NCBI RefSeq assembly: GCF_006345805.1
Contig: NC_043003.1
Coordinates: forward strand, 115,258,001 to 115,322,000
Direction: 5' to 3'
Source: Octopus sinensis
Lineage: Eukaryota
Length of the DNA: 64,000 nt
Shown here piece by piece: positions 29,466-57,540 of this stretch (position 1 is its first letter; each line of letters begins with the position of its first letter). A program made the position numbers and the translations under genes. The notes beneath the pieces are model-generated. The model was given only the letters and a program-made list of their open reading frames with translations, was not told the DNA's origin and did no database searches.

Positions 29466-29838
29466 GGATCTTTTCGGTTTGAACGGCAGTTTTTTCTAGC
29501 GTTTTTTTTAGGTTTAGGGTTATTTAGGGTTAGGGTTAGGGGTGGGGGAAGGGTATCTTTCTTTCTTCACAAATGTAAATAAACCCAATGTGTTTCTTAA
29601 ACGAGGGACATATTCATACGGCACAGTATGATTTTTACCTCAATAGAGGTCATTGATTGGTAGAAATTACAGAAATTGAAGGAAAAAAACAACAAATATC
29701 TTACAAACTATAGAATTTTCTCAATAAAGCCGAGAGAAAAAGATGTTTTATGAACACATTCTACCAGTATACGAAGTTTAAAATTTTTTAGTTACCTAGA
29801 AATTATGTTAAAAACTGCCGTTCAAACCGAAAAGATTC
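29466..29838. mobile_element. GGATC-TIR MITE copy M1 (internal deletion)
   Basis: 29-bp TIRs and TTAGGG motif; 8-bp flanks AAAGATAA/AAAAATAC (6/8). Confidence 0.9.
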
Positions 29839-40848: not shown

Positions 40849-42070
40849 CTAGCAGAGACACCCGACGTTGCCCGGGAATTAATTTTTCCTTATGTATTGG
40901 AAGAATAATAATAAAAAATAACAATAGTAATATACGAAAATACAAAATTTACCACTTTTATGAAAGGAGATAAATTTTACCACATATGTTGAAGGAGGTT
41001 ATCTTAGAGCTTGTTTTCTGGTTTGGAGCATAGACAAATAAGTATTGCAAATTACCTTCGCTGGAGTAACCAACAAAGTTGACCATGAGAAAATCGAGCA
41101 TGTATATTTCAAAGACTGATCTTGAGCTGTATTAATAGACATTGCAAAGGAATGTAGTACTGGGAATTGTGTTCGTTTGAACTGAAATGGCATGTCTGTT
41201 GGTTTGAGTGTATTTCTTGAAAGGAAAACCTCTTCTCCAGAAATACATCCAGTGATGATAGTGGCTTGTGTCACATTAGGTGATAATGTGTTCACAATCA
41301 ACCTTGTCCCATTGCATAATTTAGGAGGATCTAAATTTCTTAGAACCATTATTGGGACACCCACCTTCAGAAAAAGTTGACGTGGAGGAATTCCATGTGG
41401 CTCAAGAGAATTAAGGAACTCCGCTGAGTAATGCTTTGATTTTCATCACGGACTGAATCAGCTGATTTGTAGTTCTTAATGACTGTTGGAACCTTATTCA
41501 TTAATTCATTGTTAATTCTTGCTACTGTTTCATTTTTTGGATTAAGAATTGCCCTTCCACACAACCATTTATGTGAATTATAATTATTCCTTAACTCTCG
41601 CAATACGCTGTTCTTTAATTGAGCTGGGTAATTTATCATGATAGGAATATGAGCCAAAGTGGTATCGTCACTCCCATCAAGTGGTACTTTACCATTTCCT
41701 AATTGGAGGAGGCAGGTTGAAAACTATTTTGTACATTGGTCCCCATGTAATGAACCTAGCACGTTAGTATTGAAGGAGAATTTCAGTACTTTATTCCATG
41801 GGTGTGAAACCTTAATGCATGTTTTTATTTCATCAGATTTTGTTCGTCTCAGAATGATTGGTAACGTCTGTCTCAAGTCTCCTGATAAAACTAATGTAAC
41901 TCCTCGCATAGATTTATTGTTGCCTCTGATGTCCTGTAAGGTCTTGCCAAGCGCTTACGTTGCACTCCTGTGTGACATTGTGCATTCATCCCAAAAGATA
42001 AGTCGGCATTGGCACAACATTTCTGGTGAACCTGAATCTTCGCTTAAGTCACAAATTAGACTGTCAATCG
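40849..42070 (-). mobile_element. Helitron 3' half: decayed PIF1-type helicase and canonical 3' end
   Basis: IFWDECTM (Walker B), VLSGDLRQTLP, RAILNPKN, PIMVLRNLDPPKLCNGTRL and QFPV..SFAMSIN.AQ.QSL motifs. Terminal hairpin CCCGGGCAACGTCGGG then CTAG-T at 40849 on the minus strand. Confidence 0.93.
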
Positions 42071-43225: not shown

Positions 43226-43668
43226 GGATCTTCTCGGTTTCAACGGCAGTTTTTTAATATAATTTCCACGTAACTAAACACTTTTAAACTTCGTATACTG
43301 GTAAAGTTTGTTTATAAAACTTCTTTTTCTCTTGGCTTTATTGAGAAAATTCTATAGTTTGTAAGATATTTGTTGTTGTTTTTCTTCAATTTCTGCAATT
43401 TCAACCAATCACTGACGTCCACTGAGGTAAAAAATTATTCTGTGCCGTATGAATATGTCCCTCGTTTAAGAAACAGATTGGGTTTATTTAGATTTGTGAA
43501 GAAAAAACGATACCCTTCCCCCACACCTAACCCTAACCCTAACTAATCCTAACTAACCCTAACCCTAAAAAAGATTGAAATGCAATAGATCGATACTAGT
43601 GTCATAATTATGGGTGACAATTTCATATAGCACCGCTAGGAAAAATGCCCTTCAAACCGAAAAGATCC
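43226..43668. mobile_element. GGATC-TIR MITE copy M2
   Basis: Both TIRs present; 8-bp TSD CAATGAGG/CAAAGAGG. Confidence 0.93.
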
Positions 43669-43966
43669 CAAAGAGGTTATGAATGGCTGCATGCGCCCCT
43701 CATCACATGCAGTACCATAAATCTTTTAAACAGTCCGTTTTTATCATGTATTTACATAACAATAAATTATCATGTTACATATCATTGCAAGTATTTGAAC
43801 CGTTATATACATTCTCTACAATTGTTTTCTTTTTCAATATTTTTTTAAAACATAACATAAAACGCCTGGCTCTTTCTTTTTTTCTTCCTTTTTTTTCTCC
43901 TTTTACTTTTTTTCGTTTTTCTTTTCTCTTTTTTTTTCCTGTCAATTTAACATTCTTATTTACTTT

Positions 43967-44540
43967 TTAGTAATATTTCATTAGTGGTTCGATATCTACT
44001 AAATCCACTACTGGTGGCAATTCTTTGAATTCCACCCTTACTCCTGGTGGTTCAATATTATCTCCACACATTTCTTGTAGTCTCTTATAACTTTCTTCTT
44101 CAATCCCTATCGCCTTCATGTCCTCTTCATATATATATATATGCTGGTACCTTTACTCTTTCTATTTGATTGAACTTGAGTATTTCCTTCTCTTTTTCAA
44201 TATTCTTCGAGCATGTAACCTAATACCATACACCATTTCCTCCTTTTATTTTCTTTCCGTTATTTTGACTTTCCTGTTCTCTCTTTTCCTCCTCCACTCT
44301 AAACAGTCTCTCTAATTCTTCTTCGGCCAGCTGAATTTCCGAATCCTTTTCTACCGGAGCAACTGGTATTTATTACTTGTAGCTCCACATTCTTTTTACT
44401 TTCTTTCTCTGTCACCCTTTTGTCTTCCTTCCTGCTGACCTCCTTCGCGGTTTCTTTTCTCATATCTTCTCTCTTCTTTTTCTGTTTCTCTGTGTTCCAA
44501 ATTTAAATCTTGCCGAATTCAGCTTCGTTTCTCATCCCTC
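43967..44540 (-). pseudogene. Decayed charged-residue-rich ORF C-terminus, possibly a LINE ORF1 remnant
   Basis: EIQLAEEELERLFRVEEEKREQ...EEDMKAIGIEEESYKRLQEMCGDNIEPPGVRVEFKELPPVVDLVDIEPLMKYY*, with one stop and one frameshift at a (TA)n. No diagnostic motif recognised. Confidence 0.35.
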
Positions 44541-46448: not shown

Positions 46449-46863
46449 GGATCTTTTCGGCTTGAACGGCAGTTTTTTCTAGCGGTGTCATATGAAATTG
46501 TCACCCATAATTATAACCCTACTATCGATCTATTGCATTTAAATCTGTTTTAGGGTTAGGGTTAGTGGTGGGGAAAGGGTTTTTTTTTTCTTCACAAATG
46601 TAAATAAACCCAATCTGTTTCTTAAACGAGGGACATACTCATACGACACAGAATGTTTTTTACCTCAATAGACGTTATTGATTGGTTGAAATTGCAGAAA
46701 TTGAAGAATAAAAACAACAAATATCTTACAAACTATAGAATTTTCTCAATAAAGCCAAGAGAAAAAGATGTTTTATAAACACATTCTACCAGTATACGAA
46801 GTTTAAAATGTTTTAGTTACCTAGAAATTATGTTAAAAATTGCCGTTCAAACCGAAAAGATCC
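46449..46863. mobile_element. GGATC-TIR MITE copy M3
   Basis: Both TIRs present; 8-bp TSD GAATCTTG/GATTCTTG. Confidence 0.95.
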
Positions 46864-47531
46864 GATTCTTGTTCCAGCATTGTATGACACACCCAAAACA
46901 CGAAATAATTTCTAGCGATGGCACCTGGGTTTGTGTCACTGTTATAGTGAGTATCAGTGGTATAGTGGATACTCAGGCACCTGGGTGAGTATCAGTGGTA
47001 TAATCACTTTCCAGAGGAAGAGAGAGGCACTTCTTGGTATAGATAGTGAAAAGGAAGCAACATTTTTGGAAGTATATATGTATGTGTGTGTCTGTCCGCG
47101 CGCGCGCGCGTGTATGTATTTGTAGGTTTATGTTTATATATACGTGTATCCACACGAATATATATTTGTGTATGTATAAATTGGTTCGGAAATGCAATAG
47201 AACAATTTATAAACTAGTAACGTAAGTTTCACACGTAACATTGGTATATGACACAGCTGCAGTAATATGTTGAGCATTTGGTAGAAGAAATTCACTGACT
47301 GCTGTTGGATGAAAATAGAATATCAAATATAGTCTAATGATACAATGACTATTTGAGGAAAAAAGTAAAATTAATTGGGTGGGAAAGGGGGAGGGAGAGA
47401 GCAATTAGACTGATGACTGGCAGAATATGAAATGTTTCAAATTGGCAAAACAAACAAGTGGCATTCAATACAAAACGTAAACTATAATTATAAAGAAAAG
47501 AGAGGGCAAGAGCAGAGGTAAGGGAAATCTT

Positions 47532-47555
47532 GGATCTTTTCGGTTTGAACGGCAG
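47532..47555. mobile_element. Solo TIR of the GGATC MITE (M4)
   Basis: GGATCTTTTCGGTTTGAACGGCAG followed by unrelated sequence. Confidence 0.9.
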
Positions 47556-47802
47556 AAAGCACGTATATCAAACCACCATCCTGATCTGAACTTTAAATTT
47601 CCTGCTTATTGCATTCAACCCCCAATCTGGAGCACATGTTCGATTACCTCAGTTATTTACAGAATTTGACTATCAAATCTACGTATTCTCTATAAATATC
47701 ATTCTAGGAGATTCACCATGTGTCATAATGGTATATATATTTCTTACAACTTCACTCCTTTTTAATGCTTCCTTCTCCAACTGCTCACATTTTAAAGATT
47801 TC

Positions 47803-48215
47803 GGATATTTTCGGTTTGAACGGCAGATTTTTCTGGCGGTGTCATATGAAATTGTCACCCATAATTATGACCCTAGTATAATCTCTTTTAGGGTTAGTTA
47901 GGGTTGGTTAGGGTTAGGGATGGGGGAAGGATATCTGTTTTTCTTCACAAATGTAAATAAACCCAATCTGTTTCTTAAACGAGGGACATATTCATATGGC
48001 ACAGAATGATTTTTAACTCAATAGACGTCACTGATTGGTTGAAATTGCAGAAATTGAAGAAAAACAACAACAAATATCTTACAAACTATAGAATTTTCTC
48101 AATAAAGTCAAGAGAAAAAGATGTTTTATAAACACATTCTACCAGTATACGAAGTTTAAAAATTTTTAGTTACCTAGAAATTATGTTAAAACTGCCGTTC
48201 AAACCGAAAACATCC
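47803..48215. mobile_element. GGATC-TIR MITE copy M5
   Basis: Both TIRs present; no direct TSD, but the left flank AAGATTTC is the reverse complement of the M4 left flank. Confidence 0.93.
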
Positions 48216-48475
48216 GCAATCTGTAATATTTGTTATAACAAATATTATTAATTTACAGATGATATTTGTTCCGATTCCTACTCTTTAGCAAGAACTCTTG
48301 CACATTTACTCGAGTAAATTCTTTTTTATGTTTGTCATATTCAAACATAAAATACATTTTGGTGTTTTGTTATCTATACTTTAATGGAGAAATCTACTTA
48401 TCGATTAATTCTAATCATGCCAAAAGATTATCAAAGGTTAGTCTGCCTGGAATCTTTTTTATAAATTTCAGATTT

Positions 48476-48907
48476 GGATCTTTTCGGTTTGAACGGCAGT
48501 TTTTAACATAATTCCTAGGTAACTAAAAAATGTTAAACTGCGTATACTGGTAGAATGTGTTTATAAAACATCTTTTCTCTTGGCGTTATTGAGAAAATTC
48601 TATAGTTTGTAAGATATTTGTTGTTGTTTTTTCTTCAATTTCTGCAATTTCAACCAATCACTGACGTCTAGTGAGGTAAAAAACATCCTGTGCCGTATGA
48701 GTATGTGCCTCGTTTAAGAAACAGATTGGGTTTATTTACATTTGTGAAGAAAAAAGATACTCTTCCCCCCACCCCTAACCCTAACCCTAACTAACCCTAA
48801 CGCTAAAACAGATTGAAATGCAATAGATCGATACTAGGGTCATAATTATGGGTGACAATTTCATATGACACCGCTAGAAAAAACTGCCGTTCAAACCGAA
48901 AAGATCC
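48476..48907. mobile_element. GGATC-TIR MITE copy M6 (opposite orientation to M5)
   Basis: Both TIRs present; no 8-bp TSD (TCAGATTT/AATGTCTT). Confidence 0.95.
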
Positions 48908-49138
48908 AATGTCTTTTATCAAAATGCAGTTTTGGAGCTTCGTTAGAGTTGCGTATTTCAGGGACATGCTTCCATCATAAATCTTATTCACTATGACATT
49001 TGAATTTACTGCGGGCTTTATTTAACGTATGTATACATTTGTGAAACTATAAATGTTGCCCAAATGTTTCCAAAGTTACTTTCTCCAGAATATAAGTTTA
49101 AATACATCAGCAGCAAAATTATACTGATTCCAGTGTCT

Positions 49139-49528
49139 GGATCTTTCCAGTTTGAACGGCAGTTTTTTCTAGCGGTGTCATATGAAATTGTCACCCATAA
49201 CTATGACCCTAGTATCGATCTATTCCATTTAAATCTATTTTAGAGTTAGGGTTAGTTAGAGTTACTGTTAGTTGTGGGGGAAAGGTATCTCCATTTTTTT
49301 TCAGAAATGTAAATAAACGCAATCTGTTTCTGAAACGAGGGATATTTTCATACGGCACAGAATGTTTTCCCCTCAATAGACGGTCATTGATTGGTTGAAA
49401 TTGCAGAAATTGAAGAAAACAAACAACAAATATCTTACAAACCATAGAATTTTCTCAATACGAAGTTTACATTTTTGTTAGCTACCTAGAAATTATGTTA
49501 AAAACTGCCGTTCAAACCGAAAAGATGC
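49139..49528. mobile_element. GGATC-TIR MITE copy M7 between 231-bp direct duplicates
   Basis: Both TIRs present; 48908-49138 is repeated at 49529-49759. Confidence 0.93.
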
Positions 49529-50221
49529 AATGTCTATTATCAAAATGCAGTTTTGGAGCTTCGTTATAGTTGCGTATTTCAAGGACATGCTTCCATCACA
49601 AATCTTATTCACTATGACATTTGAATTTACTGCGGGCTTTATTTAACGTCTGTATACATTTGTGAAACTATAAATGTTGCCCAAATGTTTCCAAAGTTAC
49701 TTTCTCCAAAATATAAGTTTAAATACATCAGCAGCAAAATTATGTTGAATCCAGTGTCGTTTCATATTTGCTGGGTGTTGTTGAAGAAATAGAAATCTGA
49801 ATAAGACAAATGGTTTTAGTTTACATACGACAACTGTGAATGACTACAAACACACACCCCATCACCCACTGATTATGTTTCCTGATAACTTTCAAGAAAA
49901 TGGATACTTTTAAAGAAATTTTCTACGAATATCTTTCAGATGGCATAGATTGCGATTATATCGGAATTTAATGTTTAAAAATGATGGAGAGGATGACAGT
50001 TTACACATCTCTACTTTATTTTCGTCCTACATTTTCATAATATCATTACAAGTGAATGTTGAAAAATATGACTTTTGAGAAATATTGCACTCTTTGCCGA
50101 AAATGTTCTGAAATAAATCTGTGTGGAAAGGGAAGTACAAAGCTAACAGGAATTATATTTTCGCAACCCTAATCACTGTTTTTTTAAATAGAATCTAGGA
50201 TGGTCTGTTCCCTGCGTGACA

Positions 50222-50314
50222 CCTTGGTTGAGCAGGTGGCTTCTTCTATAGCCTCGCTCCGACCAAAGCCTTGTGAGTAGATATGGTAGATGGAAACTGA
50301 AAGAACCCGTCGTA

Positions 50315-50408
<94 letters not shown>

Positions 50409-50610
50409 TGTGTCTGTGTTTGTCCCCCCCACTATTGCTTGATAACCAATGCTGGTGTGTTTATGTCCCCTGTAACCTAGCAGTTCGGCAAAATAGAACG
50501 ATGGAATAAGTTCTAGGCTTACAGAAATAAGTCCTGGGTTCGATTTGTTCGACTGAAAGGCGGTACTCCAGAATGGCTGCAGTCAAATGACTGAAACAAA
50601 TAAAATAATA
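50222..50610 (+). mobile_element. SINE family A, 5'-truncated
   Basis: CCGACCAAAGCCTTGTGAGT..GACGGAAACTGAAAGAA..GTCAAATGACTGAAAC. Confidence 0.85.
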
Positions 50611-50833
50611 ACATAACTGTCAGTAAAACCTCAACAAAATGGGGAAACAAAATTGAGGCATATAAATTAACCATCACGGTCTATTTTCCACATGGGATTC
50701 CTATGAAATCGTAATCTGAATCGCAATATAATCGTAATCTAGACAGTCTGAAATGTATTTGTAGAAACTCACCTTAATAAATATACATTTTTCAGGAAGA
50801 TGTGAGGAAATTAAATCAAATGGGTACAGTTGT

Positions 50834-51242
50834 GGAATGTTTTCGGTTTGAACGGCAGTTTTTGACATAATTTCTAGGTAACTAAAGAATTTTAAACTTC
50901 GTATACCGGTAGAATGTGTTTATAAAACATTTTTTTCTCTTGACTTTATTGAGAAAATTCTATAGTTTGTAAGATATTTGTTGTTTCTTTCTTCAATTTC
51001 TGCAATTTCAACCAATCAAATACGTCTATTGAGGTAAAAATCATTCTGTGTCGTATAAATATGTCCCTCGTTTAAGAAACAGATTACGTTTATTTACATT
51101 TGTGAAGAAAAAAAGATACTCTTCCCCCCACCCTAACCCTATAACAGATTGAACTGCAATAGATCGATACTAGGGTCATAATTATGGGTGACAATTTCAT
51201 ATGACACCGCTAGAAAATCTGCCGTTCAAACCGAAAAGATCC
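50834..51242. mobile_element. GGATC-TIR MITE copy M8
   Basis: Left TIR slightly degenerate, right TIR intact; the right flank is an inverted copy of 43669-44117. Confidence 0.92.
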
Positions 51243-51696
51243 GAAGGCGATAGTGACTGAAGAGGAAAGTTATAAGAGACTGAATGAAACGTGTGGAGAT
51301 AATATTGACCCACCAGGAGTAAGGGTGGAAGTCAAAGAATTGCCACCAGAAGTGGATTTAGTAGATATCGAACCACTAATGAAATATTACTAAAAAGTAA
51401 ATAAGTATGTTAAATTGACAGGAAAAAAAGAGAAAAGAAAAACGAAAAAAGAAAAAAAGAAAAAGGAGAAAAAAAGGAAGAAAAAAAAGAAAGAGCCAGG
51501 CGTTTTATGTTATGTTTTTAAAAAATATTGAAAAAGAGAACAATTGTAGATATTGTATATAACGGTTCAAATACTTACAATGGTATGTAACAGGATAATT
51601 ATTTTTTTATGTAAATACATGATAAAACGGACTGTTTAAAATATTAATGGTACTGCATGTGATGAGAGGCGCATGCAGCCATCCATAACCTCATTG

Positions 51697-51755
51697 GGAT
51701 ATTTTTAGTTACCTAGAAGTTATGTTAAAAACTGCCGTTCAAACCGAAAAGATCT
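51697..51755. mobile_element. Internally deleted GGATC MITE (M9)
   Basis: GGATATTTTT fused to AGTTACCTAGAAGTTATGTTAAAAACTGCCGTTCAAACCGAAAAGATC. Confidence 0.85.
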
Positions 51756-55735: not shown

Positions 55736-56003
55736 TCACATTTTCTTTCTTTCAAATATATTCAGAATATTCTTCACGACAAAGAATACTTCATGAAAAA
55801 TCATTTGCCGCAATTACTTTACAATATATAAGCCATTAAAAATGTGTCGTCAATTTAGAAAATGGAGATGTAGAATTAATAAAATTTATTATCTGCAAAA
55901 ATACAACATATTCTCTTATAGCTGTTTCAATTTAGGTTAAAATAATAAATTACAATAATTTAATCATTATATTAAACAAAATTTCGTCAGAGAGGTAAAA
56001 ATA

Positions 56004-56418
56004 GGATCTTTTCGGTTTGAACGGCAGTTTTTAACATAATTTCTAGGTAACTAAAAAATTTTAAACTTCGTATACTCGTAGAATGTGTTTATAAAACATA
56101 TTTTTCTCTTGGCTTTATTGAGAAAATTCTATAGTTTGTAAGATATTTGTTGTTTTTTTTTTCAATTTCTGCAATTTCAACCGATCAATGACCTTTATTG
56201 AGGTAAAAATCATTCTGTGTCATATGAATATGTCCCTCGTTTAAGAAACAGATTAAGTTTATTTACATTTGTGAAGAAAGAAAGATACCCTTACCCCCAC
56301 CCCTAACCCTAACCCTAAAAGAGATTGAAATGCAATAGATCGATTCTAGGGTCATAATTATGGGTGACAATTTCATATGACACCGCTAGAAAAACTGCCG
56401 TTCAAACTGAAAACATCC
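56004..56418. mobile_element. GGATC-TIR MITE copy M10 between 64-bp direct duplicates
   Basis: Both TIRs present; 55940-56003 is repeated at 56419-56482. Confidence 0.95.
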
Positions 56419-56958
56419 AAATATTAAATTACAATAATTAAATCATTATATTAAACAAAATTTCATGAGAGAAGTAAAAATATATACCGTTAGGTTATTA
56501 GGTGTTGTGTTTTCAAATCATCTTAGAGGACTGAATATTATTTTGTTGCTAATATTGGTATAAACTTGGGCCAGAGTGTCATAGGTTGTTTTATTATTTA
56601 ATGGAGAATGTGCATATAATCAGTGTAATAATTGGTAAATATAAAAATACAGGTTAGATAGTGAGTTACAGTAAATAAGAGTATCATATGAAAGAAAGAT
56701 TAGATAAATGAACACTTTTGAAATTTGTTTATAAAATTGAGGGAAATTAACGTGAAAAATAGATAAAAAATATATGTTTACGCTGGTAAAAAAACTACTA
56801 GGCAACAAATCAATAACTCACCTTATGTTTAGTATATATGTAAATATATATAAAATTACTTCATCCGTGTAATAAGGTTCAACAAAAAGAATACTCCATC
56901 TGCTAAGAGTAAACACATTGTGAATTGATAGTATAAAACAATATATATATATATATAT

Positions 56959-57123: not shown

Positions 57124-57540
57124 GGATCTTTTCGGTTTGAACGGCAGTTTTTTTCTAGAAGTGTCATATGAAATTGTCACCCATAATTATGACCCTAGTA
57201 TCGATCTATTGCATTTCAATCTCTTTCAGAGTTAGGGTTAGTTAGGGTTAGGGTTAGGGGTGTGGTAAGGGTATATTTTTTCTTCACAAATGTAAATAAA
57301 CCCAGTCTGTTTCTTAAACGAGGGACATATTTATACGGCACTCAATAGACGTCAGTGATTGGTTGAAATTGCAGAAATTGAAGAAAAAAAACAACAAATA
57401 TCTTACAAACTATAGACTTTTCTCAATAAAGCCAAGAAAGAAAGATGTTTTATAAACACATTCTACCAGTATACGAAGTTTAAAATTTTTTAGTTACCTA
57501 GAAATTATGTTAAAAACTGCCGTTCAAACCGAAAAGATCC
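57124..57540. mobile_element. GGATC-TIR MITE copy M11
   Basis: Both TIRs perfect; 8-bp TSD TTTCTCTG/TCTCTCTG. Confidence 0.95.

What the first reader, a model, noticed from the sequence alone, without database searches (positions are those of the whole stretch)
48908..49759. 231-bp direct duplication flush against both ends of MITE M7 (X-MITE-X')
Seen: 48908-49138 and 49529-49759 are both 231 bp and differ at about 10 positions (~96%). X ends at the first base of the M7 left TIR, X' begins at the last base of its right TIR, and X itself begins at the right TIR of M6. The duplication behaves like a giant target-site duplication. The divergence argues against a collapsed or duplicated assembly read. 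Inference: a hybrid-element-type insertion 231 bp from the donor site.
Basis: partly seen in the sequence, partly recalled or inferred. Interest (0 to 1): 0.8.

Follow-up and report, generated by a model that had tools for sequence, protein, structure and literature searches.

The report
Duplicated flank around an octopus MITE
A small non-coding mobile element (MITE) in what looks like octopus DNA has the same 231 bases on both sides, most likely a scar of a faulty transposition or repair event at the element's ends; this kind of rearrangement is already known from fly and maize transposons, so it is a tidy natural example rather than a new phenomenon.

Summary
48908-49138 (X) and 49529-49759 (X') are 231 bp each, differ at 10 positions with no indels, and occur nowhere else in the window. 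X ends within 1 base of the first base of MITE M7. X' starts right after M7's last base.

There is one correction. Both copies are preceded by the same 29-nt terminal inverted repeat (TIR): M6's right end and M7's right end. The repeat is therefore 259-260 nt, and its left edge cannot be placed more precisely than somewhere within that TIR.

The MITE family has nine full copies in the window, 29-nt TIRs starting 5'-GG, and 8-bp target duplications on isolated copies. It looks Merlin-like rather than classic hAT.

A second copy, Md (56004-56418), also carries a flush flanking duplication, of 64 bp, with no neighbouring MITE. Four clustered copies (M5-M8) lack target duplications.

Best reading (0.45): aberrant, sister-chromatid or hybrid-element-type transposition. 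Main rival (0.30): an exchange or template switch guided by the shared TIR, with an M7-empty partner. This rival reproduces the sequence exactly and explains why X'/b shows no footprint.

No comparative locus could be retrieved. It is a new member of a known kind, of modest interest.

The parts
48476..48907 (+). MITE M6 (432 bp). It is 2.8% diverged from the family consensus, and its right ('B') end faces X. It has no target-site duplication (TCAGATTT vs AATGTCTT, 3/8).
48879..48907 (+). Right TIR of M6 (R6), 29 nt. It forms the first 29 nt of the 259-260-nt direct repeat.
   Evidence: (D1, D6)
48908..49138 (.). X, first copy of the 231-bp duplicated segment. It lies between the two inward-facing B-ends of M6 and M7.
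49131..49138 (.). CAGTGTCT, the 8 bp left of M7. If M7 was once a simple insertion, this is its presumed original target duplication 'd'.
   Evidence: inference
49139..49528 (-). MITE M7 (390 bp). It lies in the opposite orientation to M6, has a 45-bp internal deletion and is 7.5% diverged from consensus. Identity to M6 is 90.6% at aligned positions (81% counting gaps). It has no own target-site duplication (1/8).
49500..49528 (+). Right TIR of M7 (R7), 28/29 identical to R6. It is the only direct homology between M6 and M7 available for an exchange.
49529..49759 (.). X', second copy of the 231-bp segment. It runs seamlessly into unique sequence b (TTTCATATTTGC...).
55940..56003 (.). D64, left copy of a 64-bp direct duplication flush against MITE Md.
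   Evidence: (D2)
56004..56418 (+). MITE Md (415 bp, 3.6% from consensus). This is the second case of the same architecture, with no other MITE or TIR remnant at the outer edge of D64.
56419..56482 (.). D64', right copy (59/64 identical), flush against Md's right terminus.
47803..48215 (-). MITE M5, part of the same cluster. It has no target duplication (3/8). Its left flank AAGATTTC is the exact reverse complement of the flank of the solo TIR at 47532-47555.
50835..51242 (+). MITE M8, part of the cluster. It has no target duplication (1/8). Its right terminus abuts an inverted segmental copy (51243-51696) of 43669-44117.

Best explanation
X' most likely arose from an aberrant transposition of MITE M7 involving sister chromatids, of the hybrid-element-insertion / sister-chromatid-transposition type.

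Proposed sequence of events: after replication, M7's two ends did not move as one excised unit into one 8-bp staggered target. Its left end stayed next to (or was joined at) the right edge of X. Its right end was joined 231 bp upstream, at the left edge of X on the other chromatid. The recombinant chromatid therefore carries X on both sides of M7. The broken donor flanks were then rejoined, giving the X'-b junction.

Shown: the architecture, the flush termini, the lack of a normal 8-bp duplication on M7, and the recurrence of the pattern at Md.

Inferred: that a transposase did this, that sister chromatids were involved, and the order of events.
For: (1) The direct duplication is flush with both termini of one element. 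This is the structure reported for P-element flanking duplications made by hybrid element insertion, which PMC3744419 and PMC2775673 cite as one kind of alternative transposition.

(2) M7 has no 8-bp duplication of its own (1/8). Isolated copies Mb, Mc and Me have 7/8 and Ma has 6/8.

(3) A second copy, Md, has a 64-bp flush flanking duplication (59/64). No MITE or TIR remnant lies at its outer edge, so homology between TIRs cannot explain that case. Two of nine copies show the pattern, against 0.27% of random pseudo-elements.

(4) For Md, the per-copy divergence of the duplication (3.9%) matches Md's own divergence from consensus (3.6%). This fits a duplication made at or near the time of insertion.

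(5) The surrounding cluster shows other marks of end-mediated rearrangement. Four adjacent MITEs in alternating orientation all lack target duplications. There is an exact inverted 8-mer pair at the solo TIR and M5. An inverted segmental copy stops exactly at M8's terminus, where the source locus has no TIR.
Against: (1) The model needs the new target to lie exactly at M6's right terminus. That is a coincidence unless insertion next to a resident end is favoured.

(2) If M7 originally had an 8-bp duplication (CAGTGTCT), joining of the donor flanks should leave a second copy or a footprint after X'. The observed junction CAGTGTCG|TTTCAT has only one copy. The Md case also shows no clear second copy.

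(3) M7 is more diverged (7.5%) than the duplication (about 2.2% per copy). This is compatible only if M7 was already resident or arrived as an old copy.

(4) No transposase gene, empty-site allele or reciprocal product could be examined.
Confidence: 0.45

Rival explanations
1. A homology-guided exchange between the two identical 29-nt TIRs, with no aberrant strand transfer. M7 was an ordinary insertion (8-bp duplication CAGTGTCK) at the X/b boundary. An unequal crossover, or a template switch during repair or replication, then joined M7's right TIR on an M7-filled chromatid to M6's right TIR on an M7-empty chromatid. The empty chromatid could be a polymorphic empty allele, a chromatid from which M7 had just excised, or a second switch across the 8-bp duplication.
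For: The repeat is 259-260 nt and includes the TIR. Its left edge therefore falls inside pre-existing direct homology. An in-silico exchange inside the TIR between hypothetical 'filled' and 'empty' chromatids reproduces window 48300-49900 exactly. That reproduction includes the seamless X'/b junction with only one copy of the 8-mer. This model explains all three flush boundaries without any coincidence.
Against: Only 29 nt of direct homology are available, because M6 and M7 are otherwise in opposite orientation. That is short for classical non-allelic recombination. The model needs an M7-empty partner. It cannot explain the Md case, where no TIR lies at the outer edge, so two mechanisms would be needed for one rare architecture seen twice within 7 kb. 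A simple sister-chromatid crossover would leave a third MITE after X' (argument as in PMC3744419), and none is present.
Confidence: 0.3
2. Capture of a released fragment. Transposase cut at M6's right end and M7's left end on one chromatid and freed X. End-joining then inserted X into a cut at M7's right end on the sister chromatid (filler or captured DNA at a cleaved transposon end).
For: All four breakpoints (both ends of X', and the insertion point between M7's right TIR and b) coincide with TIR termini. The M8 / 51243-51696 junction looks like a similar insertion of copied DNA exactly at a right terminus.
Against: It needs three cleavages and two end-joinings that left no footprint. The two ends bordering X are both 'B' ends, which is not a normal left-right pair. 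It does not explain Md.
Confidence: 0.08
3. A microhomology-mediated tandem duplication of about 224 bp arose first. M7 then inserted by chance, or through target preference, exactly into the junction 8-mer. On this reading CAGTGTCT | (C)AATGTCT would be M7's own target duplication.
For: X starts with AATGTCT and ends with AGTGTCT (6/7 in the 7-nt register). Counting the last TIR base, the match is 7/8.
Against: It requires M7's right TIR to be one base short as well as mutated (GATG instead of GATCC). It requires M7 to hit the junction exactly, and M6 to sit exactly at the other edge without a matching duplication on its left. Chance similarity of this size is about 2% over the registers scanned.
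Confidence: 0.07
4. Assembly artefact. Two haplotypes (M7-filled and M7-empty) were stitched in tandem through the shared TIR.
For: The stitched product would be identical to the observed sequence.
Against: The window is 64 kb of gap-free sequence through dense 400-bp repeats and long microsatellites, with no N, which implies long reads that would span the 1.3-kb structure. A 4.3% difference over 231 bp is high for allelic variation in octopods (my own knowledge, not tested). Md shows the same architecture independently.
Confidence: 0.05

Closest known systems
P-element hybrid element insertion (Gray, Tanaka & Sved 1996; Preston, Sved & Engels 1996, 'flanking duplications and deletions'), as cited in PMC3744419 and PMC2775673
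   Same: One element sits between two direct copies of its own flank, and the copies are flush with both termini. The element has lost its matching 8-bp duplication. The event is local, tens to hundreds of bp from the donor site.
   Different: No footprint or second 8-bp copy is seen at the rejoined donor flanks. The outer edge coincides with another element's terminus. The element is a non-autonomous MITE in an octopod, probably of a different superfamily. No genetic evidence (recombinants, reciprocal deletion) is available.
Ac/Ds alternative transposition in maize: sister-chromatid transposition, and reversed-ends transposition giving tandem direct duplications (Zhang, Zuo & Peterson 2013, PMC3744419)
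   Same: Closely spaced elements with 8-bp target duplications are involved. [quoted passage not shown] The small natural examples reported there (147 bp at 93%, 1262 bp at 96%) are of similar size and age.
   Different: In the reversed-ends model the two elements are copies of each other, lie in the same orientation, and are as similar to each other as the duplicated segments are. Here M6 and M7 lie in opposite orientation and are 90.6% identical (81% with gaps), against 96% for X/X'. I derived the reversed-ends products for this arrangement and none gives M6-X-M7-X'-b.
TE-mediated ectopic (non-allelic homologous) recombination, e.g. Galileo-generated inversions (PMC2775673)
   Same: The exchange occurs within element sequence, so junctions look 'flush' and target duplications end up mismatched or exchanged.
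   Different: Only 29 nt of direct homology are available. The expected third repeat copy is missing unless the partner lacked M7.
Merlin-superfamily MITEs (Feschotte 2004, as summarised in PMC8101967)
   Same: TIRs of at least 24 bp with conserved terminal 5'-GG, and 8- or 9-bp target duplications.
   Different: No IS1595-type transposase partner is present in the window, so the superfamily assignment rests on the termini and duplication length alone.

Membership tests
MITE (non-autonomous TIR element) | Short (<800 bp), terminal inverted repeats, multiple dispersed copies, no coding capacity | tested here: met
   There are nine copies of 371-443 bp plus two fragments. TIRs are 29 nt: GGATCTTTTCGGTTTGAACGGCAGTTTTT / ...AAAAACTGCCGTTCAAACCGAAAAGATCC. 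Copies are 88-95% identical pairwise in a star-like pattern. Only short spurious ORFs are present.
MITE (non-autonomous TIR element) | Fixed-length target-site duplication on simple insertions | tested here: met
   An 8-bp duplication is seen on isolated copies: Mb CAATGAGG/CAAAGAGG, Mc GAATCTTG/GATTCTTG, Me TTTCTCTG/TCTCTCTG (7/8 each), and Ma 6/8.
Merlin superfamily | TIR of at least 24 bp with terminal 5'-GG, and 8-9-bp target duplication (PMC8101967) | tested here: met
   Termini are GG...CC in all intact ends, and the duplication is 8 bp.
Merlin superfamily | Autonomous partner encoding a DDE_Tnp_IS1595 transposase with matching TIRs | not testable with these tools
   The TIR matches only MITE copies in the 64-kb window. 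No genome of this species is reachable. The metagenome scan for the TIR was empty.
hAT superfamily | 8-bp target duplication | tested here: met
hAT superfamily | Short TIRs starting 5'-YARNG (own knowledge of the family) | tested here: not met
   Termini start GGATC, with no conserved CAG/TAG.
Hybrid-element / sister-chromatid-transposition flanking duplication | Direct duplication of the flank, flush with both termini of a single element | tested here: met
   X|M7|X' with edges within 1 base of the termini. The same holds for D64|Md|D64'.
Hybrid-element / sister-chromatid-transposition flanking duplication | The element's two 8-bp flanks no longer match (one old, one new target) | tested here: met
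   M7: CAGTGTCT vs AATGTCTA, 1/8.
Hybrid-element / sister-chromatid-transposition flanking duplication | Rejoined donor flanks at the far end of the second copy keep a second copy or footprint of the old 8-bp duplication | tested here: not met
   Observed ...CCAGTGTCG|TTTCATATT. The untrimmed prediction is ...CCAGTGTCG CAGTGTCT TTTCATATT. This assumes M7 once had a normal duplication. Microhomology joining could erase the second copy, so the failure is soft.
Hybrid-element / sister-chromatid-transposition flanking duplication | Existence of a single-X progenitor allele or a reciprocal deletion | not testable with these tools
   No orthologous or allelic sequence could be retrieved.
Reversed-ends-transposition tandem duplication (PMC3744419) | TE-segment-TE-segment, with the two TEs in the same orientation and as similar to each other as the segments are | tested here: not met
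   M6 (+) and M7 (-) are inverted relative to each other. They are 90.6% identical (81% with gaps), against 95.7% for X/X' (I3, 4, 52).
Non-allelic homologous recombination / template switch between repeats | Direct repeat present at the start of both duplicated units | tested here: met
   A 29-nt TIR (28/29 identical) precedes both X and X'.
Non-allelic homologous recombination / template switch between repeats | A third copy of the repeat (here a second M7) at the distal end of the duplication | tested here: not met
   X' runs into unique sequence, and no MITE similarity is found in 49755-49900. The feature is rescued only if the partner chromatid lacked M7.
Ordinary target-site duplication | Length fixed by the transposase (8 bp in this family) | tested here: not met
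   Flush repeat lengths are 8, 8 and 8 bp on Mb, Mc and Me, but 64 and 231 bp on Md and M7.

The most novel reading that the evidence does not exclude
Long, variable flanking duplications (64 and 231 bp, in 2 of 9 copies here) are a regular by-product of how this Merlin-like MITE family integrates. Either its two ends often integrate uncoordinated or across sister chromatids, or hybrid-element events are very frequent. On this reading the TSD-less, alternating-orientation cluster at 47.5-51.8 kb records repeated alternative transposition in a cephalopod germ line. That would be the first natural evidence of this process outside the P and hAT systems.
Probability: 0.3. Interest if true: 0.5.

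Novelty: new member of a known kind. Interest (0 to 1): 0.3.

Why it matters
Tandem and flanking duplications made directly by DNA transposons are well documented experimentally only for P elements in Drosophila and Ac/Ds in maize and rice. Natural examples in genomes are few; PMC3744419 found three among 7,611 hAT-family insertions in maize.

If the two flush duplications here are transposase products, this octopod MITE family would provide a natural case in a mollusc, and in a probably different superfamily. It would also suggest that closely packed MITEs are a local source of small structural variants in cephalopod genomes, which are very repeat-rich.

If the cause is instead TIR-guided exchange, the locus shows that a 29-nt TIR is enough homology to seed a duplication.

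Either way the effect is local and non-coding, and no gene is involved.

Tried and rejected
Comparative data (all attempts empty):
- Exact look-ups of two junction-spanning ORFs in public assemblies.
- Metagenome scans for an X-specific 28-mer and for the TIR.
- A protein-level search with an X/MITE-spanning ORF.
- Two Octopus sinensis loci (75 kb), which contained no copy of the MITE or of X.
- A literature search for the TIR string.

X as part of a dispersed composite element: rejected within the window. There are only two copies, and no other MITE copy has X beside it.

Reversed-ends transposition (maize tandem-duplication model): rejected. M6 and M7 are inverted relative to each other and are not sister copies, and the products I derived for this arrangement do not match the observed order.

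Inversion by recombination between inverted MITE pairs (M5/M6, M6/M7, M5/M8): the predicted exchanged 8-mers are not observed.

Composite 'macrotransposon' M6-X-M7 or M8-c-F' inserted as a unit: the outer flanks show no 8-bp duplication.

Simple later insertion of M6 at the edge of X: rejected, because M6's left flank is not AATGTCTT.

RNA genes: no Rfam family and no tRNA in or around the region. TRF cannot see the 621-bp period.

Relative ages from divergence (M6 2.8%, M7 7.5%, X about 2.2% per copy): these were considered, but they are weak evidence because a cut-and-paste element carries its old mutations with it when it moves.

Full report
WHAT IS THERE

The window is AT-rich (about 34% G+C), packed with microsatellites and free of N. 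Its only clear protein relic is a Pif1-type helicase fragment of a Helitron at 40999-41364. The best matches to that fragment are Octopus sinensis and O. bimaculoides proteins at about 73% identity. The source is therefore an octopod or a close relative. That is an inference from one repeat-derived ORF.

The region of the finding contains a dense set of one MITE family:
- Nine full copies: 29466-29838, 43226-43668, 46449-46863, 47803-48215 (M5), 48476-48907 (M6), 49139-49528 (M7), 50835-51242 (M8), 56004-56418 (Md) and 57124-57540 (Me).
- A solo 24-nt TIR at 47532-47555.
- An internally deleted copy at 51697-51754.

Copies are 371-443 bp long and carry a degenerate (TTAGGG)n tract. Their 29-nt TIRs begin 5'-GGATCTTTTCGGTTTGAACGGCAG. 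They differ from their consensus by 2.8-7.5% in a star-like pattern.

Isolated copies carry 8-bp target duplications: Mb, Mc and Me match at 7/8 and Ma at 6/8. An 8-bp duplication with conserved terminal GG is the signature given for the Merlin superfamily (PMC8101967). The termini do not fit the hAT pattern 5'-YARNG (my own knowledge). I therefore call the family Merlin-like, with hAT and P not excluded. No transposase gene is available to test this.

CHECKING THE OBSERVATION

X (48908-49138) and X' (49529-49759) are 231 bp each and align without gaps, with 10 substitutions (95.7% identity). Neither has any other copy in the window.

The right edge is sharp. X is followed by the first base of M7's left TIR, and X' by unrelated sequence. 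The two diverge within one base of that point.

Both copies are preceded by the same 29-nt TIR, the right ends of M6 and of M7, which are 28/29 identical. The repeat is therefore really 259-260 nt (D1). Its left end can lie anywhere in the TIR.

M6 and M7 are in opposite orientation. Their 'B' ends face each other across X (I3: 147-nt arms, 91% complementary, 229 nt apart). They are 90.6% identical at aligned positions and 81% with gaps. They are thus not sister copies made together with X/X'.

A SECOND CASE, AND THE NEIGHBOURHOOD

I compared all MITE flanks with each other and scanned each copy for a repeat in the 'flush' register, meaning the left flank's last n bases against the right flank's first n bases. 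The results were:
- 8 bp for Mb, Mc and Me.
- 231 bp for M7.
- 64 bp for Md: 55940-56003 vs 56419-56482, 59/64 identical.

Md has no other MITE or TIR remnant at the outer edge of its duplication. Random 415-bp pseudo-elements show a flush repeat of at least 30 bp in 8 of 3000 trials. Two of nine real copies is therefore far above chance.

The four clustered copies M5-M8 alternate in orientation and all lack target duplications (3, 3, 1 and 1 of 8).

Two further end-associated features were seen:
- The 8 bp left of the solo TIR (GAAATCTT) is the exact reverse complement of the 8 bp left of M5. This is the pattern expected when two ends insert together with an inversion. The chance estimate is about 0.007 from base composition, but 0.096 when sampling 8-mers from this microsatellite-rich window.
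- 51243-51696, flush against M8's right terminus, is a 92% inverted copy of 43669-44117, the right flank of Mb. It continues into the deleted MITE copy at 51697-51754. The source locus has no TIR at the point where homology stops.

HOW X' WAS PROBABLY MADE

Two explanations fit nearly all the facts.

(A) Aberrant transposition of M7 with sister chromatids (hybrid element insertion in P-element terms, sister-chromatid transposition in Ac/Ds terms).
- I worked through the fragments. Cutting M7's left end on one sister and its right end on the other, then inserting the pair upstream on the first sister, gives a-X-M7-X-b on one chromatid.
- This model predicts a duplication flush with both termini and mismatched 8-bp flanks on M7. 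Both are observed.
- It also fits the Md case, where no TIR homology is available, and the general disorder of the cluster.
- Against it, the new target must lie exactly at M6's terminus.
- Also against it, the rejoined donor flanks should keep a second copy or footprint of M7's old 8-bp duplication, and the X'/b junction has none. Microhomology joining of the two 8-mers could remove it, but that is an added assumption.

(B) An exchange or template switch inside the shared 29-nt TIR.
- Suppose M7 was a simple insertion at the X/b boundary. Joining M7's right TIR on a filled chromatid to M6's right TIR on a chromatid lacking M7 then gives exactly the observed sequence.
- The M7-lacking chromatid could be a polymorphic empty allele, a freshly excised site being repaired from the sister, or a second switch across the 8-bp duplication during replication.
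- A scripted reconstruction from the window's own pieces is identical to 48300-49900.
- This explains every flush edge and the seamless X'/b junction without coincidence.
- Against it, only 29 nt of homology are available, it needs an M7-empty partner, and it cannot explain Md.

I put (A) at 0.45, because the same rare architecture occurs twice and once without any TIR at the outer edge. I put (B) at 0.30. Lesser alternatives are:
- Capture of a transposase-released X fragment at a cut M7 end (0.08).
- A microhomology tandem duplication followed by M7 insertion exactly at its junction (0.07). X does begin AATGTCT and end AGTGTCT, but the model needs a shortened and mutated TIR.
- A haplotype-stitching artefact (0.05). 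This is unlikely in gap-free sequence of this kind, but no reads were available.

COMPARISON WITH WHAT IS KNOWN

The nearest precedents are P-element flanking duplications made by hybrid element insertion, and the Ac/Ds alternative-transposition products.

The maize reversed-ends model gives TE-segment-TE-segment in which the two TEs are sister copies in the same orientation (PMC3744419). M6 and M7 fail that test.

Classical recombination between elements would leave a third element after X', as the same paper argues. No third element is present, so only the filled/empty variant of model (B) survives.

A literal giant target duplication, made by one integration with a 231-bp stagger, is not a known property of any cut-and-paste superfamily. 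It cannot be told apart here from integration of the two ends into different sister chromatids.

VERDICT

The hybrid-element reading is plausible and gains support from the newly found Md case. It is not established, because a TIR-guided exchange explains the M7 locus at least as neatly.

The phenomenon belongs to a known class of transposon-associated local duplications, seen here in an octopod MITE family that appears undescribed. The TIR string is absent from the searchable literature. Interest is modest, at 0.3. The recurrence of the pattern in one 64-kb window is the part most worth a genome-wide follow-up.

Noticed in passing
55940-56482: MITE Md (56004-56418) is flanked, flush on both termini, by a 64-bp direct duplication (55940-56003 / 56419-56482, 59/64 identical). 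No other MITE lies at its outer edge. This is a second, independent X-MITE-X' case.
   Followed up: yes
47524-47555 and 47795-47802: A solo 24-nt TIR at 47532-47555 has left flank GAAATCTT, the exact reverse complement of M5's left flank AAGATTTC. An inverted target duplication of this kind is expected from an inversion made by paired transposon ends. The statistical support is only moderate in this microsatellite-rich window.
   Followed up: partly
51243-51754 vs 43226-44117: 51243-51696 is a 92% inverted copy of the right flank of MITE Mb (43669-44117). At one end it stops exactly at M8's right terminus. At the other it runs into an internally deleted MITE copy (51697-51754), which keeps 9 nt of one end and about 50 nt of the other, plus Mb's 8-bp target sequence CAATGAGG. 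The source locus has no TIR at 44118.
   Followed up: partly
47532-51754: Five MITE copies in strictly alternating orientation are separated by spacers of 247, 260, 231 and (231+1075) bp. M5-M8 all lack target duplications, whereas isolated copies keep them.
   Followed up: partly
48216-48262: A perfect 24-nt palindrome (48224-48247, TAATATTTGTTATAACAAATATTA) begins 8 bp from M5's right terminus. With one indel, the palindrome arms extend to the terminus itself. This could be a hairpin-derived scar, but that is speculative.
   Followed up: no
48908-48914 and 49132-49138: X begins AATGTCT and ends AGTGTCT (6/7). This may be chance, a target preference, or microhomology used in the event.
   Followed up: partly
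40999-41657 (- strand): A Pif1-type helicase fragment (Pfam PF21530 in its homologues), i.e. a decayed Helitron. Its best hits are Octopus sinensis and O. bimaculoides proteins at about 73% identity, which is the basis for calling the source an octopod.
   Followed up: partly
MITE-internal, e.g. 48772-48806, 47886-47920, 49244-49270: Every copy of the MITE carries a short degenerate (TTAGGG)n / (CCCTAA)n telomere-like tract of variable length.
   Followed up: no
49870-49961 and 50726-50818: Inverted repeats of about 93 nt (73% identical) bracket roughly 950 bp. This interval contains a dispersed SINE-like repeat (copies at 21.7, 24.4, 27.0, 36.7, 52.0 and 60.3 kb) and the (TA)32(GA)14 microsatellite. 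It is probably another nested element just right of X'.
   Followed up: no
51244-51396 (+) and its copy 43964-44116 (-): Both copies of the duplicated segment end in an open reading frame of about 50 codons (...CGDNI(E/D)PPGVRVE.KELPP.VDLVDIEPLMKYY*), followed by an AATAAA-like signal and an A-rich tract. This is possibly the 3' end of a gene or of a retro-copied transcript.
   Followed up: no
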